This document shows, piece after piece, positions 21,237 through 64,000 of a DNA stretch of 64,000 nucleotides. Position 1 is the stretch's first letter; every line of letters starts with the position of its first letter. The stretch covers positions 243,125 to 307,124 of the IMG/VR virus record IMGVR_UViG_3300037110_000087. One strand, given 5' to 3'. Position numbers and translations under genes: made by a program. Below the pieces are notes generated by a model that ran no database searches, was not told the origin of the DNA, and saw only the letters and a program-made list of their open reading frames with translations.

Positions 21237-21421
21237 TGCCTTTATTTGATTATGAATGTGGATGCGGTCACCGGACAGAAGTGTTGGTTCCTTCTCCGGA
21301 TGTTAAAGAGATTGAGTGTCCTCTATGTCAATGTATCGCACGACAGAAGTTTCCAATAAGTACACCGATTTTTGTCGGTGATGGTTGGTTTAAAGATGGA
21401 TATGCCAAGAAGGGGAAGTAA
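21236..21421 (+). CDS. FmdB-family zinc-ribbon protein
   Basis: MPLFDYECGCGH...CPLC...F.GDGWFK.GY. Confidence 0.8.
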   Translation: MPLFDYECGCGHRTEVLVPSPDVKEIECPLCQCIARQKFPISTPIFVGDGWFKDGYAKKGK

Positions 21422-22599
21422 TGTTGGGAGTACAGAAATACCTGCGTTGTGGAAAGACCATCGAGAACCTCTGTGCTGAATTCAGTATCAAGGCTAGAGT
21501 TGATCCAGCACTTGGTGTAGTCAGCCTAAATTATGACCAAATCAATTCTGTGATGAGCCTTCAGATTGTCCAGGAATGTCGCGCTCTGATTCTTGAGCTT
21601 GATACCTGGGAAGTTCTATCCTGGCCTTTCAAGAAGTTCTTTAACTATGGTGAGGGTCATATTCCAGAGGATTTCGATTGGGGCAGCTTCTCTACTCTGG
21701 AAAAGCTCGATGGCTCCCTAATTTCTCTGTGGTTCAAGAAAGTGAGTGATACACCTGGACCTCTTTATCAGGCTTATTTTTCTACCAGAAGCGTTCCAGA
21801 TGCAAACTGCGGTTACGATGAAAGTGGTGATACCTTTTTGAGTTTGATCAAGAAGACCATCGTCGAAATGGAAGCCAAGTATGGAAATTATAAGGGAGAG
21901 TTCCTCAATCATTTCATGACAGGTTATTCCTATGCATTTGAATTGACTACTCCAGAAAATCAGATCGTCGTTCAGCACAATGAACGCTGCTTGACCCTCA
22001 TTGGAGTGAGGGATCTTGAAACTCTAGAAGAAGTAGACATCTATGAATGGGCTAGGGATACCTACCCATATCCAGTCGTAAAGGGTGTCATGGGACTTAA
22101 TTTAGAGGCAGTGAAGCAAAAGGTGAGTGAAATCAATCCTCTTGATGAAGAAGGATATGTGCTCATCGACGAGAATTTCAATCGAATCAAGATCAAGAGC
22201 GATGCTTATCTCCTGCTGTCTCGTTCACGTGACAACCTGGGTAAATCCGCTCGTGCCCGGTTGGAAATTATCTTAATAGATAAAATGGATGATGTCTGGC
22301 CGATCCAGCCCAAATGGATTCAAGAAAAATTAACCAGCATGAAAGAGGCTATCCGAACTCTAGCTCTTTATATCGATCTTCAGTATGTGCAGGTTTGTGA
22401 TATTGAAGGCCAGAAAGATTTTGCTCTGGAGATCAAGGGTTTACCCTACAAGGATGCTTTGTTCCAGCTGAGGAGCAAGAAGGTGGAATCCGCGATAGAC
22501 TGGGTGAGAAACTATGGACTCAAGAATTCCCGTAAACTTCTTGATTTGTTGAAAATTGTAGTGGAGGATCTTGATGACCAAGAGTCTGAAGAGAGTTAG
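21421..22599 (+). CDS. T4 Rnl1-like RNA ligase
   Basis: CRALIL, WPFKKFFN, EKLDGS (motif I), FEL..PEN.IV, EGYV, RIKIK. Confidence 0.9.
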   Translation: MLGVQKYLRCGKTIENLCAEFSIKARVDPALGVVSLNYDQINSVMSLQIVQECRALILELDTWEVLSWPFKKFFNYGEGHIPEDFDWGSFSTLEKLDGSLISLWFKKVSDTPGPLYQAYFSTRSVPDANCGYDESGDTFLSLIKKTIVEMEAKYGNYKGEFLNHFMTGYSYAFELTTPENQIVVQHNERCLTLIGVRDLETLEEVDIYEWARDTYPYPVVKGVMGLNLEAVKQKVSEINPLDEEGYVLIDENFNRIKIKSDAYLLLSRSRDNLGKSARARLEIILIDKMDDVWPIQPKWIQEKLTSMKEAIRTLALYIDLQYVQVCDIEGQKDFALEIKGLPYKDALFQLRSKKVESAIDWVRNYGLKNSRKLLDLLKIVVEDLDDQESEES

Positions 22600-22677: not shown

Positions 22678-23193
22678 ATGAGGACTAGCGATAGTCATCC
22701 TATTGAGGTTAGTTGGCTCCCCTACCTTAATATAGGTTTGACTTTTTGTCCGGGTAAGAAACAAACAAATTCTATGACCGGTGGTTGGGATCGTGATATT
22801 GATAAGGACCTTGACCGATTGAAGGGTTATTATGGAGTAGACCGTATCATTTGTCTGATGGAATCTGAGGAGTTGGAAGAATATGGGATCCCAAACTATT
22901 TTGCAAAAATTGAAGAACACGGTATGCATTGGATTCACCTCCCTTTTCCTAATGACACCTGCCCTCCAGATGCAAGTGCGTTTGTTAGTATTGGCAGGTA
23001 TTTAAATCTTGAAAAGATAACGACTGTCATTCATTGTAAAGGTGGTATTGGTCGGACAGCAATGTTAGCGGCAGTCTGTTTATCGTTCAATAAACACATC
23101 TGTATTGAAAAAGCTCTAGAGGAAATTTCTGAAATAAGACAGGTCATTCTAACGCCAGAACAGCGTAAATGGATGTTGAATAATTTTATGTAA
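22678..23193 (+). CDS. Cys-based (CDKN3/dual-specificity-like) phosphatase
   Basis: IHCKGGIGRT CX5R motif. Confidence 0.88.
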   Translation: MRTSDSHPIEVSWLPYLNIGLTFCPGKKQTNSMTGGWDRDIDKDLDRLKGYYGVDRIICLMESEELEEYGIPNYFAKIEEHGMHWIHLPFPNDTCPPDASAFVSIGRYLNLEKITTVIHCKGGIGRTAMLAAVCLSFNKHICIEKALEEISEIRQVILTPEQRKWMLNNFM

Positions 23194-51595: not shown

Positions 51596-53194
51596 ATGTC
51601 CATCAATAACCGTAGAACTACTCCCCTAGTTCCCTCTGCCATCGCTGTGGCCCAGGCTACCGCCCACAAGAATCATATGGCTGGCAATAGCTGGGAAATT
51701 ACCCCTATCACCCGTCTGAAGTGCATGGCGAGTTCCTGCTTCTTCGGAGAGCCGACCTATTACAACCCCAAAGTGGCTAGCTATGGCCACTTCTACGAGG
51801 GCAGCTTTCTGGGCCAGACCATGTTTGGCAAGGAATGGCATGGTTTAAATCCTGCGCAGAAGTTGGAGAAGGCGATCGATGAGGCCCTCGATTATGATGC
51901 TGAGGCGACTCTCGATTACGCTTTCGAACTGCGTACTCAGTTGAACATCCGTGCCACCCCTCAGGTGATCGCGGTCCGTGCGGCTAATATGGTTTCCCTC
52001 AAGGGTCAGGGAATCCGCCAGTATGCACTGGCTACCATTCAGCGTCCAGATGATGCTGCCACTCAGTTCGCCTACCATGTCGCCAAGTATGGCAAGAACG
52101 CTCCCATTCCCAACGCTCTCAAGAAGGCGTGGCGTGAGTATCTGATCAAGTGCACCGAATATGACTTGGCCAAATACCAGCTGGCCAGCAAGGAAGTCAA
52201 GATGGTCGACCTAATCAATATGGTCCGGCCCAAGAGCGAAGCTATCGACAAGTTCATGAAGGGCACCCTGTCCAACACCGGCAAGACCTGGGAAGCCATC
52301 ATCAGTGGTGGTGGCAGGTGGGATGAAGCGGTTGAAGTGATGGGTCACATGGCTCTGCTGCGCAATTTGCGCAACTTCGTCGAGAAGAGTGATGAAACCA
52401 CTCAGCGTAAGGTTGCTGACAAGCTGGTTGCTACTGCAGCCAAGGGTCATCAGCTGCCTTTCCGCTACTGGTCTGCCTTTAACGCCCTAGTCGAAGGTGG
52501 ACGGAGAGCACCCGGTTTCATGCTGGATGCAGTCGAGAATGCCCTGCGTGTCTCTCTGGGCAATCTACCCCGATTGCAGGGTAACAGCCTAGTGCTGTCG
52601 GACAATTCCGGTAGCGCTCGTCATGCCTTCCAGAGCAAAATGGGTTCAGTCCAGATCTCCACCATCGGTAACCTGCTGGCTGCGATCGTCGGCAAGATCT
52701 CCGATAATGCCAGAATTGGGGTATTCGGTGACCGGCTGTCCTGTGTCGAATCCCGTAAGTCCAGTTCGGTGTTCGATGACCTGAAGACTCTGAATAACCT
52801 AGGCGAAGGAGTCGGCCAGGGAACTGAGAATGGCATCTGGCTGGCGCTCCATCAGGCTATCGCGGAACGCGAACATTGGGATAATATCTTCGTCTGCAGC
52901 GATATGCAAGCCGGTCATGGTGGGCTTTATGGTTGTGGCGTCATCCCCAGCGAATACCTGTGGCGTACCAACAACCAGGGCTATGGTGCGGCCAGCAGCC
53001 CGGTCACCATTGATGTTCCTTACATGCTGCACAAGTACCGGAAGATCAATCCCAATGTCAACGTGTTCCTGATCCAGACCGCTGGATACGAGGACACCAT
53101 CATCCCTGAATACTTCGATCGCACCTACGTGATCGGGGGATGGAGTGATGGGGTGATCCACTTCGCTGATCAGATGATCAAGCTGCGTCAATGA
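51596..53194 (+). CDS. Ro60/Rsr TROVE-vWA RNA-binding protein
   Basis: N.MAGNSW, FFGEPTYY, R..LNIR..P, IQRPDD, MALLRNLRN, QLPFRY..A, VLSDNSGS MIDAS, SDMQ. Confidence 0.9.
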   Translation: MSINNRRTTPLVPSAIAVAQATAHKNHMAGNSWEITPITRLKCMASSCFFGEPTYYNPKVASYGHFYEGSFLGQTMFGKEWHGLNPAQKLEKAIDEALDYDAEATLDYAFELRTQLNIRATPQVIAVRAANMVSLKGQGIRQYALATIQRPDDAATQFAYHVAKYGKNAPIPNALKKAWREYLIKCTEYDLAKYQLASKEVKMVDLINMVRPKSEAIDKFMKGTLSNTGKTWEAIISGGGRWDEAVEVMGHMALLRNLRNFVEKSDETTQRKVADKLVATAAKGHQLPFRYWSAFNALVEGGRRAPGFMLDAVENALRVSLGNLPRLQGNSLVLSDNSGSARHAFQSKMGSVQISTIGNLLAAIVGKISDNARIGVFGDRLSCVESRKSSSVFDDLKTLNNLGEGVGQGTENGIWLALHQAIAEREHWDNIFVCSDMQAGHGGLYGCGVIPSEYLWRTNNQGYGAASSPVTIDVPYMLHKYRKINPNVNVFLIQTAGYEDTIIPEYFDRTYVIGGWSDGVIHFADQMIKLRQ

Positions 53195-54589: not shown

Positions 54590-54960
54590 CTGTTTCCCCA
54601 CACGCTGCAAGACAATCTGTAAAGGTTAATGGTAAAATAAAGATTCATTAAGGGCAAATTTTCATGATCAACTCTCTACCCAAACAATATTGCATGCCAA
54701 ATTCCATTGAATTTGGTCGTGGAATGCTTGTGTAAAGGGTCTTTCTGAATCTTTTTATGGAAAAGGCCCCTCGTCAAACAGGGGCCTCAACATTTCCGAC
54801 CCTGGTTCCTTAGATTAGTCCGCACAAATCGCAGAGCTACGAACTCTGAGAACGCCAGTTGAAATCTGGCAGGAACCACCACTGGAGCAAGTTGGATCAA
54901 ACAACTAGAAGTTAGAATAGATCCAAGGCAACAATCAAGGTTGAAGCCAAACAGAAGGGA

Positions 54961-55174: not shown

Positions 55175-55279
55175 CCAACAGTAGTGATCGGAACGGTTAC
55201 TTCCCTACCAAACAAGAGAAAAACGGGTTCGCCCGTTGTCGTGGGTAAAACCACTCTCCGTTCCCCCTTTCTCTGTTGG
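55175..55279 (+). ncRNA. Y-RNA-like (Yrl-type) RNA, reduced core, copy 1
   Basis: CCAACAG/CTGTTGG outer stem, bulged nt, GGAACGG/CCGTTCC inner stem, GGTTACTTC motif, pyrimidine-rich 3' strand. Confidence 0.65.
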
Positions 55280-55291
55280 AAGCAATTCAGC

Positions 55292-55390
55292 GGCAGTAGT
55301 GATTGAAATGGTTACTTCGGATAAGCATCAGGTGTTGAGCCTGACTGGCGCGGTCGTCGAAGACCGCTACCCATTTCGCCTTTCTCTGTT
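55292..55390 (+). ncRNA. Y-RNA-like RNA, reduced core, copy 2
   Basis: GGCAG/CTGTT, GAAATGG/CCATTTC, GGTTACTTC. Confidence 0.65.
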
Positions 55391-55511
55391 AGCAACATCG
55401 AGGCTTGGCAATCGCTGAGCCTTAACTCCCTAGGGTAGTCAGGATTCAGTTCCTATCATCTTGTGTTGGAAGGGAGCTAGCAACGTAGAGTACACATAGC
55501 GTTGCAACAAT

Positions 55512-55589
55512 CGGCCTTTAGCGCAGTCTGGTTAGCGCGTCTCGTTTGGGACGAGAAGGTCCGGAGTTCGAATCTCCGAAGGCCGACCA
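55512..55589 (+). tRNA. tRNA-Pro(TGG)
   Basis: Full cloverleaf: CGGCCTT/AAGGCCG, TCTCG-TTTGGGA-CGAGA, GTTCGAATC, encoded CCA. Confidence 0.93.
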
Positions 55590-55639: not shown

Positions 55640-56419
55640 ATGAAATATGAAGAATTGGGAAACAAAGACCAATACCTAGGGATGGTGACCCTAAGGTGTA
55701 CGACCTGCGAAAAGGAATTCGAACGTCAGGCAAAATACGTTCGATCTTCGATAAAGCTCCATCCGCAAGACAACATAGACTGTGGATGCAAGAATATCAG
55801 GAAGTGTTCCTTCTGTCAAAAATCATCACCTGAGGTAAGATTCACAAAGACTCACAGAGTCTGCGTTGATTGTAGGAAGACTTACAATCATGAATACTAT
55901 CAGGAGAACAAAGAAAAAGTGAATTCGGATAAAGTCTTGAGACAGACAAAGACTTACCGGGAGAACTTTGATCGGGTCAGCCAGTACAAAGAATCTCATT
56001 CCTGTGTTGACTGTGGTAGATTTTTCCCGGCTTGTGCGATGGATTGGGATCATCAAAGAGATAAACTACATAATATTTCTGAGATGGTCAAATTTGCGGC
56101 TTGGGATCTGATTGAAGCTGAGATTGCTAAGTGTGAGCTGATCTGTGCGGTTTGTCACAGGATCAGGACCGCGAAAGAAGGCTCTTACCATAGGGTTAGG
56201 GAGCAAAAACCGAAGGCGCGATCCACCAAGGGCTTCCGTCCTCCTAAAGACGAGTTGGTGAAGCTCGTGCAAACATTCTCAATTTCTGCGATCGGTCGCC
56301 AGTTTGGTGTGAGCGACACGATGGTTAGAAAGTGGTGCAAGATCTTTGACATCGACTACAAATTACTCAGCAAGTTCTCGTTGCAGAACATCTGCCCTGA
56401 GGTTTATGGTCCAGAATAA
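55640..56419 (+). mobile_element. HNH homing endonuclease in ncRNA field
   Basis: CVDCG...MDWDH...EIAKCELICAVCHRIRT. Confidence 0.85.
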
Positions 56420-56634: not shown

Positions 56635-56746
56635 GGGGGAGTAGCTCAGCATTGCATAGAGCGCTGCAGATCAGTCCAGATATCCATGGTTCCGTCTGGA
56701 GGAAATCCGCAGAGGGCGGCGGTATCAAATCCTCTCTCCCCTACCA
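56635..56746 (+). ncRNA. tRNA-like RNA with 41-nt expanded anticodon loop
   Basis: GGGGGAG/CTCCCCT-A-CCA, GCTC/GAGC D-arm, CTGC/GCAG stem, internal TCCAGA/TCTGGA hairpin, degenerate T-arm. Confidence 0.7.
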
Positions 56747-57358
56747 ATAGGTCCAAGTCGAACCTGATGATCGCACATCGAATCGTCTTCCCGTAGTCGG
56801 CACACCCAAGTAATGCGAGAAGTGGTGAAAAGTCGAAACAAAATTCCAGTGGGTCAAGTGGAACGAATTGGTGAAATGCCATAGTATAAATAGCGTGACG
56901 GTCGACCGTCACGCTCCTATCTTGGTTGTGCACAACAACCCATAGTTCTGAGTCCGATCTCGATCTAATGTGGATAAAGGATCTTGCTAGTCCTCCACCA
57001 TCGGGAGAATGCGAGGCCGCTGCAGCCGTTTTGCGCTCAGATAAACAACTTCCAGTGAGACAGGCCCAATGGGTTGAATAACTGGTTGCATAAATAACGG
57101 GACATGCCATTCCCTTTGTCTAAAATCGACCCTGGTTAAGGTAGGTGAGCCTTCCAGGTTCTTTGACATCGCAGATTCCATGAAGCCTATCAGCGAGGGC
57201 AGTCGACAGAGTAATGGAATCTATAGCATAGGTGACACCAATGCCCACTCCAATTTGTCGGTATCGGTTGGGTTAGTGGATTACGAATCCGGGCCTTCTA
57301 GTCGGGCTTAGTATACTGAGTCCTGGGTTAATGCTAGGTGAATCACCCAGGGCGCATA

Positions 57359-57435
57359 GCGGGGGTAGCTCAGAGAAAGAGCAGCAGGGACAATATCCTT
57401 GAAGGTCGGAGGTTCAAGTCCTTCCCCCCGCACCA
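57359..57435 (+). ncRNA. tRNA-like RNA with non-canonical anticodon loop (ACAATAT)
   Basis: GCGGGGG/CCCCCGC-A-CCA, normal D and T arms; no U33. Confidence 0.75.
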
Positions 57436-57492
57436 TTTAAATCAATACCCCCACAAGCGGAGAAGAAATTCTGTGATGCGAGTGGGACCCCT

Positions 57493-57571
57493 GGCGGGGT
57501 AGCTCAGATGCATTAAGAGTACCGGCTAATTAAGCTGGAAGTCAGGGTCTTGCAAACCCTCCCCGCCACCA
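57493..57571 (+). ncRNA. tRNA-like RNA (loop TAATTAA, T-loop CTTGCAA)
   Basis: GGCGGGG/CCCCGCC-A-CCA; CCGGC/GCTGG; altered T-loop. Confidence 0.7.
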
Positions 57572-57579
57572 GTACAAGT

Positions 57580-57662
57580 CTTTCAGCAGTGATTGGAACG
57601 GTTACTTCAAATGTGATTGAGCCGTGGGGCAACCCACTCTCCGTTTCGCTTTTCTCTGAAAG
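57580..57662 (+). ncRNA. Y-RNA-like RNA, minimal core, copy 3
   Basis: CTTTCAG/CTGAAAG, GGAACGG/CCGTTTC, GGTTACTTC. Confidence 0.65.
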
Positions 57663-57725
57663 GTTATTAGGTCCTTGCCATGGAGGCAAGAAGGAAACTT
57701 GGGCATGCACTCCCAACCTATCATA

Positions 57726-57796
57726 GGGCGGGTACCTCAGATGCGATAAGAGGTCCTCCAAGGAAGTCGGTGTGTTGCAAGCACTCCCGCCCACCA
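57726..57796 (+). ncRNA. tRNA-like RNA with vestigial anticodon arm
   Basis: GGGCGGG/CCCGCCC-A-CCA; CCTC/GAGG D-arm; CCT-CCA-AGG mini arm; T-loop GTTGCAA. Confidence 0.7.
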
Positions 57797-57839
57797 ATCT
57801 CAAAATCCTGACCCTGTAGTCTTGCTCCTATAACGAGCG

Positions 57840-58390
57840 CATAAGGCTGGACTGGGCATTGGCACCGGAAACCGCTATAGCAGCTAGGGCCGGAAACGCA
57901 AATGTCATAGCAGGGTCGCCCATCAAATCTCCATGGTGGTGGAGATCAACGTGGCGATTCACAAGAACGAGGGACGGTGAGGGAACGCAGAACGTAATCC
58001 TGTGCACAAGGGTTCTGACTAATCCCAAGAAACGGAGGCATTCTAGATATGCTTCATGGAATAGTTTCCTTCCAGCCACGTGTAATTCTTAGGATACAGA
58101 ACCCGGTAACGGGCTGAAACGAATCGAAGTGGCTTGTGCAAAGATCTCATCCGTAGGGGTGGGGGAGCCGGGAAAGGGTGAAGCGGAAGGTACAACCGCA
58201 GAAGCAACTCCCACGAGCAGAGAGGGCACTCTCACGGAGCCACTATCCTGAGAAGCAAATCCATCCCTGAGAACGGCAATTCAAGGGGAGAGAAACCCAA
58301 GTCCTGTCCTTGCCGGGATAAAACACACGCCACCCTGAGAAGGTGGAAATTCCTAAATAGGGCTGTAGGAGATGAGCGGTGTGAGGGTAT
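57840..58390 (+). ncRNA. candidate large structured RNA
   Basis: No credible ORF; many hairpins (CCCG-GTAA-CGGG, GAGAG-GGCA-CTCTC, CCACC-CTGAGAA-GGTGG); CTGAGAA three times. Confidence 0.45.
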
Positions 58391-58399
58391 ACAATCAAA

Positions 58400-58570
58400 C
58401 GGCGGATAGCTCAGTTGGAGTTATCAGAGCGCCACATCAAGGAAAAGTAGAAGAAAACTTGGGGCAAAAGCTGAGTGAATTCGCGACGATCTCACTGAGT
58501 AGCCTAGAGCAGAGTATTCTAACCAGTACTAGTGTGGAGGGCGGTGGTTCAAATCCATCTCCGTCGACCA
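58400..58570 (+). ncRNA. tRNA-like RNA with 96-nt anticodon-loop insert
   Basis: CGGCGGA/TCCGTCG-A-CCA; CCACA/TGTGG; GGTGG-TTCAAAT-CCATC. Confidence 0.75.
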
Positions 58571-58746
58571 TTTCGGTAGGTAGTTTAAACAGAACGCGGT
58601 GTGCAGGAAGACGAGGAACGAAGCACCAGTACAGCACGTGTAAACTGGCGAGTTGAACCGGGGGCCACTCAGTCTTTTTAGGACTGGTGACGCAAACAAA
58701 CACATTGAGATTGAGGGTTTGAGCCTCATCTACCGTCCAGTTCATT

Positions 58747-58827
58747 GGTGGAGTACCTCAGGGACAGGCAGAGGGACCTCGTAGCACGAGAGGAAAGTCG
58801 GTGGTTCAATCCCATCCTCCACCACCA
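58747..58827 (+). ncRNA. tRNA-like RNA with aberrant anticodon arm
   Basis: GGTGGAG/CTCCACC-A-CCA; CTCGT-AGC-ACGAG 3-nt loop; T-arm intact. Confidence 0.7.
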
Positions 58828-59006
58828 ATGTCAAGAACGGTAATCAATCCGTCGCCTTGTGATCCGGGTATGTTGGATCACCCCTCCACTCTGGGGAAAG
58901 AATCCGGGTAATGGTGGATCAACCGGAAGGCAAAGCAACAGATGCGGCAAAATTGAAAAGGCCCCGCGAGGAAGTCGACTCTAAATGTGCTGTTGCAAAG
59001 TTCAAG

Positions 59007-59145
59007 TTCGGCAGTGATTGTCACAGTTACTCCATGCTAAGGACGAGGATTTGGGATTCGAATTCCCATCGGGGCCTCCAATACAACCATTGGTCCCGTA
59101 GCTCAGGGGTAGAGCGCGTAAAACACTGTGTCGCCTTTCTCCGAA
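59007..59145 (+). ncRNA. YrlA-like Y RNA with circularly permuted tRNA domain
   Basis: TTCGG/CCGAA stem with bulged C, CACAG/CTGTG, GTTACTCC; then T-arm TGGGA-TTCGAAT-TCCCA, loop-closed acceptor CGGGGCC/GGTCCCG, D-arm GCTC-AGGGGTA-GAGC. Confidence 0.8.
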
Positions 59146-59150
59146 TCAAT

Positions 59151-59223
59151 TGGCCCCTCGTCTAATGGAGGACAAGTCCCACACCGGGAAGAAACGCGGG
59201 TTAGAATCCAGCGGGGCCAACCA
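59151..59223 (+). ncRNA. tRNA-like RNA with 5-nt anticodon loop
   Basis: TGGCCCC/GGGGCCA-A-CCA; TCCC-ACACC-GGGA; T-loop TTAGAAT. Confidence 0.65.
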
Positions 59224-59242
59224 AATCTCATAGGAGCGCATC

Positions 59243-59554
59243 GTGCAAATCGATAATCTACCAACCAAAGTTGATCTCAGGGACAGATTCTTGTTTCCTC
59301 CCATTTATGATCAAGGTGAACTCGGATGTAGTGTATGTTGTTCTTCTGCAGCGATCTTGGACATGACGAAAATTAATCAGATGATCGGCAAGAAAGTCCG
59401 AAAGGATAAGAAGCCATTCAAATCAACATTTAAGGTCAACACCGTCAAAGGTGTGGTGGACCATCCCATTCTGCATGTGCCCTGTTTCACCTTCGAAGAG
59501 GATGATTCCTACGTTGAGTGCAGACGGTGCATCGCAGTCGAAGATTCCCAGTAA
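59243..59554 (+). pseudogene. papain-like (C1) peptidase N-terminal fragment
   Basis: LPTKVDLR...PIYDQGELG; remainder of the domain absent. Confidence 0.5.
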
Positions 59555-60057
59555 AAGGTAGTATTGAGGAACGTACCAATAAGTGGCTATGAAGAGCTAC
59601 AGGTGTTCCAGGTGGGTGTACAGTCCTACCACCTTCTTACCTCTTCACAGGGCTGGGAATACGATCGGCTAAGTAGTACCCGAATGCGAACCTTAGCTGA
59701 AGGGGCTTATACTCCTAAAAATAGTTTTAAGATTTTCTAAAAGGAGAAAAAGAGATAATAAAAGATAAGAGATGTACTTGGTATGCAGCTTGGCATTATT
59801 GTATTTATCTTCCATTAGATGATGACAAACTTTATCAAATAGCAATTCCGTATCATGGATATTTTGAACACTTACAAAGACTTGAAATAACTAACGAACG
59901 TAATGCAGATGATAATGATTTGTCTTTCAATTATTAGAATATAGCTTGGATGACTCTACTCGTAAGAATGAGTCGAAAATGTTGGTAACAGCATATAAGT
60001 TCGTAGCTCCAAGCTATTAAAAAATTCAAATTAAGATTCCGATTAGTAAGAATATGA

Positions 60058-60597
60058 CTATTTACAGAGCTTGTTAGCACAAGCCTGGAATTTTCTTTGG
60101 TCATTGTTCTGAATTCCTTCCAGCTTACTCTCTCCATGAATGGGTTCATAATGGAAGATTCCATTTAATTCGAAGGCTAGCTTCAGTGATGGAATAAAAA
60201 TGTCTAGTTCGGAATTGATGGTATCTTTCCGGTTGAAATGAATCTTAAGATTTGGGTACAATAAAGTAATTTGCTCTTCAAGCCATTTCTCTAGTTTGGA
60301 TCGAGTGGTTCCATGAGTCTTATGAAGGTTATTATATCTAGTCCCGCAAGAAATTGAGCAGAACAATCTACCTGATTTCGATTTCTTGAGATCTTTGGGA
60401 TTTTTGGTGATCAGTTCATTACATTGTGAGCATCTAGTGGCAAATGTAGTTGAATAATGGATATAATAACAATCCACACAACAGAAGACCTTTGATTGAT
60501 TATATCCATGATCTCTCTCAAATGGTCTGTTACATTGACAACAAACTAAGTTTACCATTTTTGTCATTTCAGCTCCTATTACTATGGTATCATGCAA
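60058..60597 (-). mobile_element. PD-(D/E)xK-type homing endonuclease with zinc-finger repeats, C-terminally short
   Basis: CxxC...FCSxxC repeats; ELDIFIP..KLAFELNG.FHY. Confidence 0.7.
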
Positions 60598-60658
60598 TCC
60601 AGGGATTCGATTTTCGGTATTCGAGTCCCTCCATTCCTCGTTATTTTGGGTTCGTATT

Positions 60659-60734
60659 GGATCGGAAGCTATATTGGTTTAGCGCTGGCGTGAAGTCCCA
60701 GAGGATGCAGGTTCGAAGCCTGTCCGATCCACCA
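60659..60734 (+). tRNA. tRNA-Phe(GAA)
   Basis: GGATCGG/CCGATCC-A-CCA; loop GTGAAGT; C31-C39 mismatch. Confidence 0.75.
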
Positions 60735-60769
60735 GTTTTGTTCTCAAAACTATTTAACTTGGAGAGTAT

Positions 60770-61063
60770 ATGAAAGGTGCTATTGTTTCTAATGAACCTG
60801 AATGCACGACAAAGAAGCCATTAATTGCGGCCTTTGAGGATGTTGAATCAACAATTGGGGAAACTGAACGGCTCGTGAGTTTGGTTGAGAGGACCTTTAA
60901 TCTACTGCTTGAAATGGTTCCTGGTGGAGAGGAAGAGGAAGGTCTGGGAAAATCGATCGATCGAAATCCAATCCCAATTGTGCAACGTTTGAATATGCTT
61001 GATGGTCGGTTGAGAACAATCAATAAGGACCTATCAGATATCATCGACCGTAGCCACATCTAA
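60770..61063 (+). CDS. hypothetical coiled-coil protein
   Basis: GGAG RBS. Confidence 0.6.
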   Translation: MKGAIVSNEPECTTKKPLIAAFEDVESTIGETERLVSLVERTFNLLLEMVPGGEEEEGLGKSIDRNPIPIVQRLNMLDGRLRTINKDLSDIIDRSHI

Positions 61064-61150
61064 TCGTTGACCAGAAGGGTGACTGGTTAACCTGTAGGAA
61101 GGGCAGCAAGGCAGCGATCTTGTCCCCTGGTCCGGAGCAATCCGGAGTCG

Positions 61151-61188
61151 AGCCAACCTGGGCACTAGTGATAGCCAACCTGGGCACT
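61151..61188 (+). repeat. 16-bp direct repeat
   Basis: AGCCAACCTGGGCACT at 61151-61166 and 61173-61188. Confidence 0.9.
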
Positions 61189-61300
61189 CGTCATTGAACA
61201 CCAGCGCTAATGGGCAAATGGCCGAAGGACGTTCGCGTCCAACAGGTTGAATTAACAACGAATTGGCGCTCCATTAAAAATCTCATGGAGGGGTAACCCG

Positions 61301-61567
61301 ATGAAGTGTGTACAGAAGATCATCAACAAAGAACCCAAGGAAGTCATCATCAAGCGCGTGTCCAACGAACAGGCCGAAAAACTGGTCAGTGAAGGTTGGG
61401 CCTTCGCCTCCAAGAAGGATTGGAAGGCTGCACCCAATACAACCTGGGTCAAGTCCACTACCACTCCCAATGCCATCAAGGAAGCCAAGCAGCGTAGGAC
61501 GGAGAAGCGTAAAACTCCGACTCCGCCCAGGGAGACTGGTTCGCGCCGGTCCAAGGCAACGAAATAA
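61301..61567 (+). CDS. small basic protein
   Basis: GGAGGG RBS; Lys/Arg-rich tail. Confidence 0.7.
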   Translation: MKCVQKIINKEPKEVIIKRVSNEQAEKLVSEGWAFASKKDWKAAPNTTWVKSTTTPNAIKEAKQRRTEKRKTPTPPRETGSRRSKATK

Positions 61568-61686
61568 AGGTTAGAACAGTTTCAGAACTAGTGGTTGAGA
61601 AGTCACTAGATGTTGAGTCGGGGTAAGCCACAGACATGGCCCGGTAATCTAGCCGGAATACAGTTTCTGCGATCTTCGACAAGTTA

Positions 61687-61774
61687 GTAAGGGCTAATGA
61701 CCCATACAAAGGTAGAGCGGCCTCTATGTTAGGCTTGCCGGGGGTCATGATCCGGTGACTAAAACGACTCTACC
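61687..61774 (+). ncRNA. 88-nt structured repeat, copy A
   Basis: GTAAGGG..ATGACCCAT.CAAAGGTAGAGCGGCC...CGACTCTACC. Confidence 0.6.
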
Positions 61775-61984
61775 TCCAATCGACTCCCTGCGGCGGTTCA
61801 ATTTAACCCGCCCTACTGAGCGATGATATGCATACTCGGCGGCGACCGACTTCCGGATGGCCCAGTGAAGTTTCAGTCCGGAGATTTTGAGAAGTCCACC
61901 CACTTAAGACCGTATCCAAGTCTGTAATTGTTTCTCTTTGGGGATCCGACAGATAAGGCTAGTGGATGAAACGGTTTCCTTTTG

Positions 61985-62072
61985 GTAAGGGTCGATGACC
62001 CATGCAAAGGTAGAGCGGCCACCATGCTTGGCCCTCTGGAGGTTTGCTCCGGAGAAAAACAACGACTCTACC
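61985..62072 (+). ncRNA. 88-nt structured repeat, copy B
   Basis: Same motif with compensatory changes. Confidence 0.6.
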
Positions 62073-62479
62073 ATCCATTTCGTGCCTTTCTACCCCGACC
62101 AAGGATGATTGACACGACTCTATGGGGATGAACAGATTCGACAGGTTTATGCCCTGAGTGTAGCGCAGGTAGAGGAAACCGATGGCCTCTCAAAAATCGG
62201 TAAAAACACAACTGCCGAAGACTTTCTTCTCCAGGCTGCGTAAGCAGCATCCTCTAAGCGATCGTTTGGTAGCTTAGTTGTAAGGAATCTCAAGGATGGT
62301 TCGCCTACCGAGAGAGTTCACAAACTAGATTCCGATGAAATGTTCTAGTCGGAATGACACAAAGGACATAAGTCCTCGATTAGAGTTGTCCGGTTTACTC
62401 TACAGAGGTCACTAGAAACGGACTAAACCTGTGAATGAACTACCTTAGGAATTTTCTTGGACAGGACTAGCATAAGTCC

Positions 62480-63043
62480 TCATCTCCACCTTGTTTGGCT
62501 AGTGCGTCCGTCCCAATCACCAAACAGACCGAGCGCATTAGCCTTCCTCATGCCTTCACAGACCACGAGCCAAGCGTTATAAGGCATAATTCCCCTGGTC
62601 ACATTACATCGGTAACAAGCAGGGACCACGTTGCCCTTCGTGTGACCTTTAGAATTGTCAATTCTATCTAATGTCATATTGGTGATAAGGTTGTCACCAC
62701 AGTAAAAGCAAGGATTAGAAATTTGTGCCAAAATAAATTTGACATCCAGATCCGAGACCCTTTTCTTCTTCTTGTCCGCTGATTTACAATATTTGAGAAT
62801 TAAGGCAGCGCGGACTTCTAAATTGGTTGACCTAGTTTCAATCTTCCTCTGAATTGATCTTCTTTGCGCTGCTTCTGGTGTAGTTTTCATTTTCTTGTAG
62901 GATAATCTTCTCAGATTGTCGCAGGTCTTACAAAGAGAGCGAAAGTATCTGACTCCTTTGATGGTTTGGGCGTAAGGCTTAACTTCGGGATATTTCTTAT
63001 TGCAACCAGAACACTGCCAAGATTCTAAGGTGATTCTTTCCAT
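62480..63043 (-). mobile_element. HNH homing endonuclease
   Basis: CFYCGD...TLDRIDNSKGH...NVVPACYRCN. Confidence 0.85.
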
Positions 63044-63622
63044 TGGTGGACCTCTCCATTAAGTATAACATTTCACTAGTCCACCAACGGTTATAATATC
63101 TTTAGGAGTAGTGATGAACAAAATTAGAGTACAAAATCTTTTGACCAGAATTTCTAGGCTCGTTCAGCAGGAACGATTGGACAAACCATCCTTGAGGCAC
63201 CGTTCCATGCCTAACCCGCAGACCCCTCAAGAGTATGCAAGACGGGAGATTGGCTTAGAGGTAGCCATTCTTTAAAGAGTGACAAGGACGATCCATAAGG
63301 GGGTAATCGGTGCGGGGCGACACCCTTGATCCGTTAGCCGAACTCAGTATAAGTCCAGGGGAAGAATAGCGGACAGTCTTCAACAAGTAGTGGGTATTAC
63401 ACCGGTATCCAGTTAAGTCGAACGGGAAGTGTTCAGAACCAATCGGCAGTTGAAGGACCCTTAGAGTCTTTGGTGTAATAACACACCTTCTTGCAGACCG
63501 CTGGTATGGAGCGGAATAAAAGAGTCCATAACAAAGCAGATTCCGTAGTCGTCATCTGAAAAGACCCTCGACTGGAGCGATCAAAGTCTGCCATGTTGGT
63601 TGATCATCTAGACCAATTTCTT

Positions 63623-63735
63623 TGGCTCATACCTCAGCTGGTAGAGGGCTCGCCTGAATCGTTATCGTAGTTTCGGACTGCGAATAACCTGTAGTAAGCG
63701 AGATGTCGGTGGTTCGACTCCACCTGGGCCAACCA
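63623..63735 (+). tRNA. tRNA (Ile-like body) with 44-nt anticodon loop containing an intron-like hairpin
   Basis: TGGCTCA/TGGGCCA-A-CCA; CTCGC/GCGAG; GGTGG-TTCGACT-CCACC; insert GTTAT-CGTAG..CTGCG-A-ATAAC. Confidence 0.75.
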
Positions 63736-63857
63736 GACCCCGCTACGCCTCTGCTAAGAACCTGCATCCTTCACCGGACCAGACCCACTAGCATGCGCAC
63801 CAAGAGAAGCCGGTAACGGAGATCGCCAGGAAGCAAGGCCTGGAATGGGGGGAATCA

Positions 63858-64000
63858 ATCGCTAGTGACCGACTGGTAAGGTCGTCCCTGATGGGGACGT
63901 AAATGCGCGGGTTCGAGTCCCGCTCTTGAAGGTAACTTCGGGATAGCTCAGGTGGTAGAGCCGTCGTGGACGTTAAAATGTGGGTTCAAATCCTGCCTAG
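63858..64000 (+). ncRNA. double tRNA-like element, truncated by window end
   Basis: D1-AC1-T1, acceptor hairpin TCTTGAA-GGTAAC-TTCGGGA, then D2-AC2-T2. Confidence 0.6.

What the first reader, a model, noticed from the sequence alone, without database searches (positions are those of the whole stretch)
56635..63735. tRNAs with 41-, 96- and 44-nt structured inserts in the anticodon loop
Seen: three CCA-ended cloverleafs (56635, 58400, 63623) have anticodon stems closing long hairpin-containing loops, too short to be group I introns. For 63623, removing 37 nt (CTGA|...|TAA) gives the canonical Ile loop CTGATAA on an Ile-like body, but other cuts give Thr or Phe. Inference: either small introns removed by a nuclease and sealed by the phage Rnl1, or permanent non-decoding mimics.
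Basis: partly seen in the sequence, partly recalled or inferred. Interest (0 to 1): 0.8.

Follow-up and report, generated by a model that had tools for sequence, protein, structure and literature searches.

The report
tRNA-shaped phage RNAs without working anticodons
A 307-kb peat phage carries tRNA-shaped genes whose anticodon loop is replaced by a long hairpin or a stub, so most look like non-decoding tRNA mimics; only one, an interrupted isoleucine tRNA, could plausibly be spliced.

Summary
At 56635-56746, 58400-58570 and 63623-63735 (+ strand) there are CCA-ended cloverleafs whose anticodon stems close loops of 41, 96 and 44 nt, and each loop folds into a rod-like extension.

They are not isolated. 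The same 9-kb non-coding array holds five more CCA-ended tRNA-shaped genes with 3-, 5- or 7-nt loops that lack U33. It also holds three normal tRNAs, a tmRNA and four Y-RNA-like units, and it lies downstream of a phage Ro60 (TROVE) gene.

The eight aberrant genes keep 56/56 acceptor, 32/32 D-stem and 36/38 T-stem pairs. Only the decoding end is free to vary. That argues for selected, non-decoding tRNA-shaped RNAs rather than decaying genes.

For candidates 1 and 2, no single-block excision gives a usable anticodon loop. Candidate 3 differs: it keeps U33 and most of the bacterial isoleucine identity set. Removing 37 nt gives CUGAUAA, so an interrupted tRNA-Ile remains possible.

I found no bulge-helix-bulge motif at the junctions, no group I core, no splicing endonuclease in the window and no spliced RNA. 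The metatranscriptomes did not cover the normal tRNA-Phe either. The inserts do not carry the Ro60-linked RNA module found here.

The parts
56635..56746 (+). Candidate 1: CCA-ended tRNA-shaped gene. It has a 4-bp anticodon stem (56664-56667 / 56709-56712) closing a 41-nt loop (56668-56708), and a degenerate T arm with an 8-nt loop.
   Evidence: Segmentation; arm fold z = -2.0. Not detected by Rfam tRNA or ARAGORN. No 7-nt loop with U33 and R37 is obtainable by one excision.
58400..58570 (+). Candidate 2: CCA-ended cloverleaf with a 5-bp anticodon stem (58432-58436 / 58533-58537) closing a 96-nt rod-like insert (58437-58532). The acceptor stem has G3:U70 and A73.
   Evidence: Strict cloverleaf scan; segmentation; arm fold z = -2.4. 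Excision gives only an ACU anticodon. Rfam tRNA does not report it.
63623..63735 (+). Candidate 3: tRNA-Ile(GAU)-derived gene with a 44-nt loop (63654-63697). In the Ile reading the 37-nt insert is 63658-63694, between nt 35 and 36. It includes an 11-bp hairpin with one bulged A.
   Evidence: Rfam tRNA 50.8 bits; ARAGORN Ile(gat) i(36,37); arm fold z = -2.9. Ile identity elements read from the sequence and compared with PMC9976931.
57359..57435 (+). tRNA-shaped gene with a 7-nt loop ACAAUAU (C33).
   Evidence: (55.3 bits, R1).
57493..57571 (+). tRNA-shaped gene with loop UAAUUAA (A33) and a 9-nt T loop. It is a paralog of 57726.
   Evidence: (41.7 bits), and repeat family D10.
57726..57796 (+). 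tRNA-shaped gene with a stub anticodon arm (3 bp, 3-nt loop) and a 9-nt T loop.
   Evidence: (25.5 bits). By my reading of the two sequences, it shows compensatory changes against 57493 at acceptor pairs 3:70 and 4:69, D-stem pair 10:25 and one T-stem pair.
58747..58827 (+). tRNA-shaped gene with loop UAGCACG (A33).
   Evidence: (48.1 bits).
59151..59223 (+). tRNA-shaped gene with a 4-bp anticodon stem and a 5-nt loop.
   Evidence: (35.7 bits).
55176..55278 (+). Ro60-linked Y-RNA-like unit 1 (P1, YAGUGA, P2, UACUUC ... UUUCU, P1').
   Evidence: Model R2, 49.3 bits; family covariation.
55291..55391 (+). Y-RNA-like unit 2.
   Evidence: R2, 45.7 bits.
57581..57661 (+). Y-RNA-like unit 3. It starts 10 nt after the CCA of the tRNA-shaped gene at 57493-57571.
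   Evidence: R2, 52.7 bits.
59006..59146 (+). Y-RNA-like unit 4. It carries a permuted tRNA-like domain (T arm, closed acceptor hairpin, D arm) and ends 5 nt before the tRNA-shaped gene at 59151.
   Evidence: R2, 26.8 bits; this unit was not in the training set. Weak Rfam YrlA hit at 59043-59121.
51596..53194 (+). Ro60/TROVE protein gene (532 aa).
   Evidence: Pfam TROVE 1.4e-8. Closest solved homolog is Thermus phage phiLo Ro60, 9KOP/9L5Y, 8.7e-12.
21421..22599 (+). Rnl1-family RNA ligase gene.
   Evidence: Pfam RNA_lig_T4_1 6.9e-12; T4 Rnl1 structures at about 1e-10.
62124..62491 (+). Phage tmRNA, present in peat metatranscriptomes.
   Evidence: Rfam 86.2 bits; exact RNA contigs 62140-62574 and others.
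54804..54881 (+). Canonical tRNA-Arg(ACG).
55512..55589 (+). Canonical tRNA-Pro(UGG).
60659..60734 (+). Canonical tRNA-Phe(GAA).

Best explanation
The three genes belong to a family of at least eight tRNA-derived, CCA-ended RNAs in a phage non-coding RNA array. In these RNAs the acceptor stem, D arm and T arm (the parts that give a tRNA its L shape and its processed ends) are kept. The decoding loop has been lost, shrunk, or expanded into a long hairpin.

**Shown:**
- The cloverleaf bodies are intact.
- The abnormality is confined to the anticodon loop.
- The expanded arms form stable rods.
- Paralogs differ by compensatory changes.

**Inferred:**
- They are transcribed with the neighbouring Y-like RNAs, tmRNA and other non-coding stretches.
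- They are matured like tRNAs (RNase P at the 5' end, CCA at the 3' end).
- They act as non-decoding tRNA-shaped modules. They could be processing and stabilising punctuation for the array, tRNA scaffolds that display the inserted hairpin, or both.

Candidate 2 has an alanine-type acceptor stem (G3:U70, A73), so it could in principle be charged without an anticodon.

Candidate 3 descends from a tRNA-Ile(GAU) gene that took up a 37-nt hairpin between nt 35 and 36. In this reading the insert stays in the RNA.
For: - **Body intact, loop abnormal.** The eight aberrant genes keep 56/56 acceptor, 32/32 D-stem and 36/38 T-stem pairs and all end in ACCA. Their anticodon loops are 41, 7 (C33), 7 (A33), 3, 96, 7 (A33), 5 and 44 nt. 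Only candidate 3 has U33. My tRNA model R1 scores the insert-free ones at 25-55 bits.
- **Compensatory changes.** By my reading of the sequences, paralogs 57493 and 57726 differ by double compensatory changes at acceptor pairs 3:70 and 4:69, D-stem pair 10:25 and one T-stem pair, with no disruptive stem change. Candidates 1 and 2 share the variable loop and T arm but have different, fully paired acceptor and anticodon stems.
- **No usable loop after excision.** Candidate 1 gives none with U33 and R37, and candidate 2 gives only ACU.
- **Structured inserts.** The expanded arms fold as rods with z = -2.0, -2.4 and -2.9.
- **Context.** The genes lie in a dense + strand array with four Ro60-linked RNA units. 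Two of those units abut tRNA-shaped genes within 5-10 nt. No intrinsic terminators above background are predicted on that strand.
- **Transcription.** Exact metatranscriptome contigs cover the tmRNA and the stretches between the tRNA-shaped genes. In three runs a contig ends at 63606-63609, which is 14-17 nt before the 5' end of candidate 3.
Against: - None of the three candidates was seen as RNA, so expression and end processing are inferred.
- The inserts have no homologs in 82 related loci. Their structure therefore has no covariation support and could be tolerated junk.
- Candidate 3 keeps U33 and most of the Ile identity set, which is what an interrupted but functional tRNA would look like.
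- Interrupted tRNAs that restore canonical loops on precise excision do exist in other TROVE-encoding phages.
- The proposed function (punctuation or scaffold) is not tested by anything here.
Confidence: 0.5

Rival explanations
1. True interrupted tRNA genes. A nuclease cuts the insert out of the anticodon loop, and the phage Rnl1 ligase (with an end-healing enzyme) reseals the loop to give decoding tRNAs. This is realistic only for candidate 3, which would become tRNA-Ile(GAU).
For: - Candidate 3 scores 50.8 bits on Rfam tRNA despite the insert, and ARAGORN calls it Ile(gat) with a 37-nt intron at default stringency.
- It keeps U33 and has A73, C4-G69, U12-A23, C29-G41 and U20, matching the bacterial Ile determinants tabulated in PMC9976931. 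Position 16 is C rather than the listed G16.
- An Rnl1-family ligase sits at 21421-22599, next to a PTP-type phosphatase at 22678-23193.
- No other intact tRNA-Ile(GAU) is in the window.
- Non-group-I interrupted tRNAs appear real in other TROVE phages. Removing the nested tRNA-like block in L074 gives a class II tRNA-Leu(UAA), and in L083 it gives tRNA-Lys(UUU).
Against: - There is no strict bulge-helix-bulge motif at the junctions. The nearest form in candidate 3 has a 3-bp central helix and would leave a 6-nt loop.
- No group I or self-cleaving ribozyme model hits.
- No splicing endonuclease or RtcB was found among the window proteins scanned.
- The nested-tRNA design of L074 and L083 is absent from the window.
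- Four excision registers give canonical-looking loops, so the Ile loop alone is weak evidence.
- Comparison with tRNAs of related phages does not single out Ile.
- Candidates 1 and 2 have no sensible product.
- The neighbouring tRNA-shaped genes are non-decoding without any insert.
Confidence: 0.22
2. Decaying tRNA pseudogenes. Duplicated phage tRNA genes were hit by insertions and deletions in the anticodon arm and no longer have any function.
For: - The inserts are orphan sequences with no homologs in 82 related loci or elsewhere in the window.
- The T arms of candidate 1 and of 59151 each carry a mismatch.
- Three homing-endonuclease genes lie inside the array, so the region is prone to rearrangement.
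- Degenerate tRNA remnants occur at 63859-63930.
Against: - Damage is confined to the anticodon loop. Acceptor pairs are 56/56 and D-stem pairs 32/32 across eight genes, and every ACCA tail is kept.
- Paralogs differ by compensatory, not disruptive, stem changes.
- The anticodon stems that close the inserts are themselves fully paired with different sequences.
- The inserts are more stable than shuffles.
Confidence: 0.15
3. Y RNAs. The tRNA-shaped body is the effector-binding domain and the inserted hairpin is the Ro60-binding helix, making a non-permuted version of bacterial YrlA.
For: - The genes are on the same strand as the phage Ro60/TROVE gene and 3.4-10.4 kb downstream of it.
- Known bacterial and phage Y RNAs are tRNA mimics encoded next to Ro60 (PMC4201824, PMC12135203).
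- By my reading of the sequences, an insert-bearing tRNA next to TROVE in L027, and a similar one in L035, carries part of the TROVE-linked module (UACUUC) inside its anticodon loop. I did not test this with a model.
Against: - The module that actually tracks TROVE genes gave 81 hits in the 82 loci searched, all on the TROVE strand. It occurs four times in the window and never in candidates 1-3, in a whole-window search with filters off.
- The inserts have no GNCGAA motif.
Confidence: 0.05

Closest known systems
Bacterial and phage Y RNAs of the YrlA type (Ro60 partners with a tRNA-like domain; PMC4201824, PMC12135203)
   Same: Both are non-decoding RNAs with authentic D and T arms and an acceptor-like stem. 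Both have a long helix where the anticodon arm would be, and both are encoded on the same strand near a Ro60/TROVE gene.
   Different: YrlA is circularly permuted, with its ends in the long helix and its acceptor stem closed by a loop. It also carries a Ro60-binding motif. Candidates 1-3 have free CCA-ended acceptor stems and lack both the GNCGAA motif and the TROVE-linked module found here. The window's own Y-like units lie elsewhere, at 55176, 55291, 57581 and 59006.
Protein-spliced tRNA introns of archaea and eukaryotes (bulge-helix-bulge, splicing endonuclease plus ligase; PMC4090602)
   Same: Both have a short structured insert in the anticodon loop of an otherwise normal cloverleaf. For candidate 3, excision restores a canonical loop, and an RNA ligase gene is present in the genome.
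   Different: There is no strict BHB motif at the junctions. The Ile-reading insert sits at 35/36 rather than 37/38. No endonuclease gene was found in the window. The setting is bacterial (tmRNA, encoded CCA). Candidates 1 and 2 give no usable loop.
Nested tRNA-like inserts in tRNA genes of other TROVE-encoding phages
   Same: Both are phage tRNA genes in arrays beside a TROVE gene, interrupted in the anticodon loop by 50-80 nt of structured RNA.
   Different: In those loci the insert is a self-contained unit: a 7-bp helix, a T-arm-like hairpin and NCCA. Removing exactly that unit leaves a 7-nt loop with U33 and A37. The same search finds nothing of this design in the window.
Stable tRNA-like RNAs of viral tRNA clusters (phage T4 species 1 and 2 RNAs; murid herpesvirus 68 vtRNAs). 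Recalled from memory, not checked here.
   Same: Both are virus-encoded, tRNA-shaped, non-decoding RNAs that sit among or beside real tRNA genes and are matured by tRNA-processing enzymes.
   Different: I could not compare sequences or structures. As far as I recall, none of those has a long hairpin replacing the anticodon loop of an otherwise canonical cloverleaf.
tmRNA
   Same: Candidate 2 has G3:U70 and A73 like tmRNA and tRNA-Ala, and it carries a large insert between the tRNA-like halves.
   Different: It has no pseudoknots and no tag reading frame of normal length, and no Rfam tmRNA hit. A bona fide tmRNA lies at 62124-62491.

Membership tests
Canonical elongator tRNA (Rfam RF00005) | Scores at or above the gathering score (29 bits) on the tRNA covariance model | tested here: inconclusive
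   Candidate 3 scores 50.8 bits with a 40-nt local insertion. Candidates 1 and 2 are not reported even at E<=10 in a 2-kb search.
Canonical elongator tRNA (Rfam RF00005) | 7-nt anticodon loop with U33 and a purine at 37 | tested here: not met
   The loops are 41, 96 and 44 nt.
Protein-spliced (BHB) tRNA intron | Removing one block restores a 7-nt loop with U33 and R37 | tested here: inconclusive
   Candidate 1: none. Candidate 2: only an ACU anticodon. Candidate 3: registers giving AGU, GGU, GAU and GAA.
Protein-spliced (BHB) tRNA intron | Bulge-helix-bulge motif (3-nt bulge, 4-bp helix, 3-nt bulge) spanning the exon-intron junctions | tested here: not met
   The strict motif is absent in candidates 1 and 3. 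The single strict match in candidate 2 lies deep inside the insert and would not restore a loop. Candidate 3 has only a 3-bp central helix form.
Protein-spliced (BHB) tRNA intron | A splicing endonuclease is available | tested here: inconclusive
   No such family appears among the 50 window proteins scanned. The ORFs inside the array are homing endonucleases. The other 243 kb of the contig and the host could not be examined.
Protein-spliced (BHB) tRNA intron | A joined (spliced) RNA exists | tested here: inconclusive
   There were no joints and no contigs on candidates 2 or 3 in four metatranscriptomes. Depth was also zero on the canonical tRNA-Phe. Candidate 1 lay outside the stretch laid.
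Group I intron in a tRNA gene | Catalytic core of about 200 nt or more, recognisable by the covariance model | tested here: not met
   The inserts are 41-96 nt. No group I hit appears at gathering or at E<=5-10.
Nested tRNA-like insert (design seen in L074, L083 and L055) | The insert begins with a 7-bp helix strand and ends in NCCA, and the residual loop is 7 nt with U33 and R37 | tested here: not met
   An unbiased search over the window and 82 loci returns only L055, L074 and L083.
Y RNA (Ro60 partner) | Encoded near the Ro60/TROVE gene and on the same strand | tested here: met
   TROVE is at 51596-53194 (+). The candidates are on the + strand, 3.4, 5.2 and 10.4 kb downstream. Candidates 2 and 3 are farther than the 4 kb used in PMC4201824.
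Y RNA (Ro60 partner) | Carries the Ro60-binding module: either GNCGAA near a bulged helix, or the TROVE-linked P1/AGUGA/P2/UACUUC/UUUCU module defined here | tested here: not met
   Model R2 on the whole window with filters off gives four hits, none in candidates 1-3. The inserts contain no G.CGAA.
Y RNA (Ro60 partner) | Binds Ro60 | not testable with these tools
   Needs a pull-down or gel-shift assay.
tmRNA | tRNA-Ala-like acceptor stem (G3:U70) plus pseudoknots and a tag reading frame | tested here: not met
   Candidate 2 has G3:U70 and A73, but there is no Rfam or ARAGORN tmRNA call. The only tmRNA is at 62124-62491.

The most novel reading that the evidence does not exclude
Candidate 3 is a working interrupted tRNA-Ile(GAU). 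A 37-nt hairpin intron that is neither group I nor BHB is cut out of the anticodon loop during infection, and the phage Rnl1 reseals the loop. That would be protein-dependent tRNA splicing in a bacteriophage. Together with the nested tRNA-like inserts seen in other TROVE phages, it would point to an unrecognised class of phage tRNA introns. Splicing could then gate when a tRNA becomes available.
Probability: 0.2. Interest if true: 0.85.

Novelty: new variant of a known kind. Interest (0 to 1): 0.6.

Why it matters
Phage tRNA arrays are usually read as codon-supply or anti-defence devices. Here most members of an array cannot decode, yet they stay under selection for tRNA shape and CCA ends. 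They sit with a phage Ro60, its probable Y RNAs and a tmRNA.

If these are functional, large phages carry a toolkit of tRNA-shaped RNAs that serve as processing signals, scaffolds or decoys. tRNA counts from gene finders would then both miss such genes and misread them.

If candidate 3 is spliced, it would be the first bacteriophage tRNA intron I know of that is removed by proteins rather than by self-splicing. It would also give Rnl1 a role beyond repairing nuclease damage.

Either outcome can be tested with tRNA-specific sequencing of one cloned 10-kb array.

Tried and rejected
- **Close relatives for covariation.** I found none. Megablast against phage records gave nothing. An exact T-arm/acceptor pattern of candidate 3 hit only the source contig in IMG/VR. 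A degenerate Y-unit pattern gave four unrelated loci with no tRNAs and no similarity. An exact-protein look-up returned only the source contig and an identical Logan assembly of another run, possibly the same sample.
- **Homologs of inserts and spacers.** blastn of the inserts and spacers against 82 TROVE loci and the window gave no insert homologs.
- **Isotype assignment.** Similarity of the candidate bodies to 354 tRNAs of related phages was low and mixed. For candidate 3 the top hits were Lys, Pro and Ile.
- **My own tRNA model (R1).** It handles long inserts poorly and mis-parses candidates 2 and 3. I used it only for the insert-free genes.
- **Minihelix-plus-CCA scan.** A scan for extra CCA-ended modules was no more frequent in the array than in the rest of the window, so I dropped it. 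My first cloverleaf scans were too permissive.
- **Rsr-binding motif.** GNCGAAN0-1G occurs at background frequency and not in the inserts.
- **Promoters and terminators.** Sigma-70 promoter and intrinsic terminator scans were not above shuffled background.
- **E. coli genomes.** blastn of 61.5-64 kb against E. coli genomes gave no match.
- **RNA evidence.** Contigs cover the tmRNA and the inter-gene stretches but no tRNA-sized gene, canonical or not.
- **Considered and rejected.** Group I introns (size, no model hit), self-cleaving ribozymes (no Rfam hit at E<=5), and a tmRNA-like role for candidate 2 (no pseudoknots or tag frame).

Full report
**Where the window comes from.** The window is the last 64 kb of a 307,124-bp IMG/VR contig from a peat metagenome (IMGVR_UViG_3300037110_000087). 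Both the JGI assembly and an identical Logan assembly of another run stop at window position 64000, so the last tRNA-like element is cut off. Nothing similar exists in the phage record collection.

The window encodes:
- an Rnl1-family RNA ligase at 21421-22599 (Pfam RNA_lig_T4_1 6.9e-12; T4 Rnl1 structures about 1e-10);
- a PTP-type phosphatase next to it, and NAD-salvage enzymes;
- a 532-aa TROVE/Ro60 protein at 51596-53194. Its closest solved homolog is the Ro60 of Thermus phage phiLo (9KOP/9L5Y, 8.7e-12). That protein binds two Y-like RNAs encoded upstream of its gene and recruits host PNPase (PMC12135203).

**The observation.** All three loci are as described. My segmentation gives:

| Candidate | Span | Anticodon stem | Loop |
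|---|---|---|---|
| 1 | 56635-56746 | 4 bp | 56668-56708, 41 nt |
| 2 | 58400-58570 | 5 bp | 58437-58532, 96 nt |
| 3 | 63623-63735 | 5 bp | 63654-63697, 44 nt |

Each has 7/7 acceptor pairs, 4/4 D-stem pairs and an ACCA tail.
- Candidates 2 and 3 pass a strict cloverleaf scan that gave 143 hits in about 1 Mb of phage loci and none in shuffled copies.
- Rfam's tRNA model scores candidate 3 at 50.8 bits with a 40-nt insertion.
- Candidate 1 is weaker. Its T arm has an 8-nt loop and one mismatch. Neither Rfam nor ARAGORN sees it. It does share the variable loop AGGGC and most of the T arm with candidate 2, so it is a diverged paralog, not chance.
- Rfam also misses candidate 2.
- The three expanded arms fold into single rod-like hairpins that are more stable than shuffles (z = -2.0, -2.4, -2.9).

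**They are part of a larger family.** The + strand from 54.8 to 64.0 kb is a dense non-coding array.
- It holds three canonical tRNAs (Arg 54804, Pro 55512, Phe 60659) and a tmRNA (62124-62491, 86 bits).
- It holds five more CCA-ended tRNA-shaped genes with no insert but a disabled anticodon loop:
  - 57359 (ACAAUAU, C33);
  - 57493 (UAAUUAA, A33);
  - 57726 (3-bp stem, 3-nt loop);
  - 58747 (UAGCACG, A33);
  - 59151 (4-bp stem, 5-nt loop).
- Across the eight aberrant genes the acceptor stems are 56/56 paired, the D stems 32/32 and the T stems 36/38. Every one ends in ACCA. Only the three canonical tRNAs and candidate 3 have U at position 33.
- By my reading of the sequences, paralogs 57493 and 57726 differ by double compensatory changes at acceptor pairs 3:70 and 4:69, D-stem pair 10:25 and one T-stem pair, with no disruptive change.
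- Candidates 1 and 2 have entirely different but fully paired acceptor and anticodon stems.

This is the signature of selection for tRNA shape and ends with no selection for decoding. It is hard to reconcile with neutral decay.

**Are the inserts introns?**
- Group I is excluded by size and by the absence of any model hit. No self-cleaving ribozyme family appears at E<=5.
- I enumerated every 7-nt loop obtainable by removing one block. Candidate 1 gives none with U33 and a purine at 37. Candidate 2 gives only ACU, an anticodon I do not know to be used, on a class I body. Candidate 3 gives AGU, GGU, GAU and GAA.
- A strict bulge-helix-bulge motif is absent at the junctions of all three. The one strict match in candidate 2 lies deep inside the insert. 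The closest form in candidate 3 has a 3-bp central helix and would leave six nucleotides.
- None of the 50 window proteins scanned is a splicing endonuclease or RtcB. The three ORFs inside the array are HNH or EndoVII-type homing endonucleases.

**Candidate 3 still stands apart.**
- It keeps U33.
- It carries A73, C4-G69, U12-A23, C29-G41 and U20. With the CUGA|UAA junction it also has G34, A35, U36, A37 and A38. These match bacterial isoleucine identity elements tabulated in PMC9976931. Position 16 is C rather than the listed G16.
- Similarity to tRNAs of related phages does not single out Ile.
- So candidate 3 clearly derives from a tRNA-Ile(GAU) gene. Whether the 37-nt hairpin (63658-63694) is removed is open.

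**RNA evidence.** Four peat metatranscriptomes, held as Logan contigs, were laid on 57800-63799.
- Exact contigs cover the tmRNA (62140-62574 and others).
- Exact contigs also cover stretches between the tRNA-shaped genes: 57837-58005, 58857-59055, 61617-61910 and 63368-63609.
- In three runs a contig ends at 63606-63609, which is 14-17 nt before the 5' end of candidate 3.
- There are no joints, and no contig covers candidate 2 or 3. Depth is also zero on the canonical tRNA-Phe, so tRNA-sized RNAs are simply not captured.
- The array is transcribed in nature, but splicing is untested. Candidate 1 lay outside the 6-kb stretch that one call allowed.

**Are they the Ro60 partner RNAs?** I suspected this at first, because Rfam gave weak YrlA hits at 59043-59121 and 63906-63961. 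Eighty metagenome loci and two viral loci encoding relatives of the TROVE protein were fetched.
- A repeated element in the window turned out to be a conserved RNA family in those loci. Its layout is: a 6-bp closing stem P1; YAGUGA plus 4-5 nt; a 5-bp stem P2; an invariant UACUUC; a variable region that sometimes holds tRNA-like arms; A(A)AC; P2'; 5-7 nt plus UUUCU; P1'.
- On 20 units, 89% of cells pair against 62.8% in shuffles (0 of 500 reach it). The covariation score is 0.75 against 0.25, and slid controls pair at 38-52%.
- A model of this family (R2) finds 81 units in the 82 loci, all on the TROVE strand. By my reading of the hit and TROVE coordinates, most lie within about 1 kb of the gene.
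- No Rfam family reaches gathering score at these units in the loci I scanned.
- In the whole window with filters off, R2 finds exactly four units: 55176-55278, 55291-55391, 57581-57661 and 59006-59146. The last was not in the training set and carries a permuted tRNA-like domain.
- None overlaps candidates 1-3, and the inserts lack the GNCGAA motif of known bacterial Y RNAs.

So the likely Y RNAs of this phage are these four units, not the three candidates. Units 3 and 4 abut tRNA-shaped genes within 5-10 nt, which suggests co-transcription and release by tRNA-end processing.

**Interrupted tRNAs elsewhere.** Several TROVE loci hold long tRNA hits. In three of them the insert is a self-contained tRNA-like unit: a 7-bp helix, a T-arm-like hairpin and NCCA. 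Removing exactly that unit leaves a canonical loop:

| Locus | Residual loop | ARAGORN call on the spliced form |
|---|---|---|
| L074 12247-12386 | CUUAAAA | class II tRNA-Leu(UAA) |
| L083 9502-9658 | CUUUUAA | tRNA-Lys(UUU) |
| L055 2815-2965 | CUUGUAA | Thr(UGU) |

An unbiased search for this design returns only these three and nothing in the window. This shows that non-group-I interrupted tRNAs probably exist in such phages.

**Conclusion.** The best-supported reading (confidence about 0.5) is that the three genes belong to a family of selected, non-decoding, tRNA-shaped RNAs in a phage non-coding array.
- Shown: intact bodies, defects confined to the anticodon loop, compensatory changes between paralogs, structured inserts, and transcription of the array.
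- Inferred: maturation like tRNAs, and a role as processing or stabilising punctuation or as scaffolds that display the inserted hairpin.
- Candidate 2 has an alanine-type acceptor stem (G3:U70, A73) and might be charged.
- Rivals: true splicing sealed by Rnl1, realistic only for candidate 3 (about 0.2); decaying pseudogenes (about 0.15); Y RNAs (about 0.05, tested and not met).

I rate this a new variant of a known kind (viral and bacterial tRNA mimics), with interest 0.6. It rises to about 0.85 if candidate 3 proves to be spliced.

Noticed in passing
window 55176-55278, 55291-55391, 57581-57661, 59006-59146; 81 units in loci L002-L084: A conserved structured RNA family is tightly linked to phage TROVE/Ro60 genes. 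It is always on the TROVE strand, and by my reading of the coordinates mostly within about 1 kb of the gene. Its layout is P1, YAGUGA, P2, invariant UACUUC, a variable domain, then UUUCU and P1'. Covariation is strong: 89% paired against 63% in shuffles. No Rfam 15 family matched it at gathering score in the loci I scanned. It is probably the Y RNA of this Ro60 clade.
   Followed up: yes
L074:12247-12386, L083:9502-9658, L055:2815-2965: These are tRNA genes interrupted in the anticodon loop by a nested tRNA-like unit that runs from its own +1 to its own NCCA. Removing exactly that unit yields tRNA-Leu(UAA) with a class II arm, tRNA-Lys(UUU) and tRNA-Thr(UGU). If RNase P cuts at the unit's 5' end and a second cut falls just after its CCA, the exon ends would be 3'-OH and 5'-P. 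As I recall, those are the ends that ATP-dependent RNA ligases join. I found no description of this design in the paper library.
   Followed up: partly
window 63245-63281: A 37-nt stretch matches very abundant metatranscriptome contigs of other organisms at 35/37, with unrelated flanks. From memory it resembles the GTPase-associated centre of large-subunit rRNA (the L11/thiostrepton site, helix 43). It may be an rRNA-fragment mimic at the head of a transcribed non-coding stretch. There was no E. coli match at E<=0.01.
   Followed up: partly
window 57837-58005, 58857-59055, 61617-61910, 63368-63609: The long 'spacers' between the tRNA-shaped genes appear as exact contigs in peat metatranscriptomes. 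Among the ORFs, only one 151-nt contig (59829-59979, one run) was seen, in the ORF-bearing stretch after 59243-59554. The spacers may be stable non-coding RNAs in their own right. They have no Rfam hit and no homologs in the related loci.
   Followed up: partly
window 61684-61778 and 61982-62077: A roughly 97-nt element occurs twice (77% identity) just upstream of the tmRNA. Each copy has a GGUAGAG...CUCUACC stem, and the first copy may form a pseudoknot. The first copy lies in a transcribed stretch.
   Followed up: no
window 63859-64000: A degenerate tRNA with a CUGAUGG (GAU) loop and a poor acceptor stem is followed by a tRNA-like gene with a stub anticodon arm, which the contig end cuts off. 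The 3' acceptor strand of the first pairs with the 5' strand of the second, giving a weak YrlA-like hit (28 bits).
   Followed up: partly
L003:2033-2128: A 96-nt tRNA-Ile in a related jumbo phage has two anticodon-arm-like hairpins in tandem. The first has a UAU loop. The second, in the variable-arm position, has a CUGAUAA (GAU) loop.
   Followed up: no
L055:3042-3662, L055:4037-4551, L074:13897-14004, L074:12960-13083: The tRNA arrays next to TROVE genes in other phages carry known large or orphan RNAs: ROOL (295 bits), GOLLD (158 bits), drum and DUF3800-I.
   Followed up: no
window 55640-56419 (+), 60058-60597 (-), 62480-63043 (-): Three free-standing HNH or EndoVII-type homing endonuclease genes are embedded in the non-coding RNA array. 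The two on the minus strand sit in AT-richer DNA.
   Followed up: partly
window 2849-4894 (-): An actin-like (Volactin family) gene is interrupted by an intein with a LAGLIDADG endonuclease domain.
   Followed up: no
window 56889-56912: A perfect 10-bp palindromic hairpin (AGCGTGACGG TCGA CCGTCACGCT) lies in the 612-nt stretch after candidate 1. It is the only strong terminator-like structure in the array, and the scan scored it on the minus strand.
   Followed up: no
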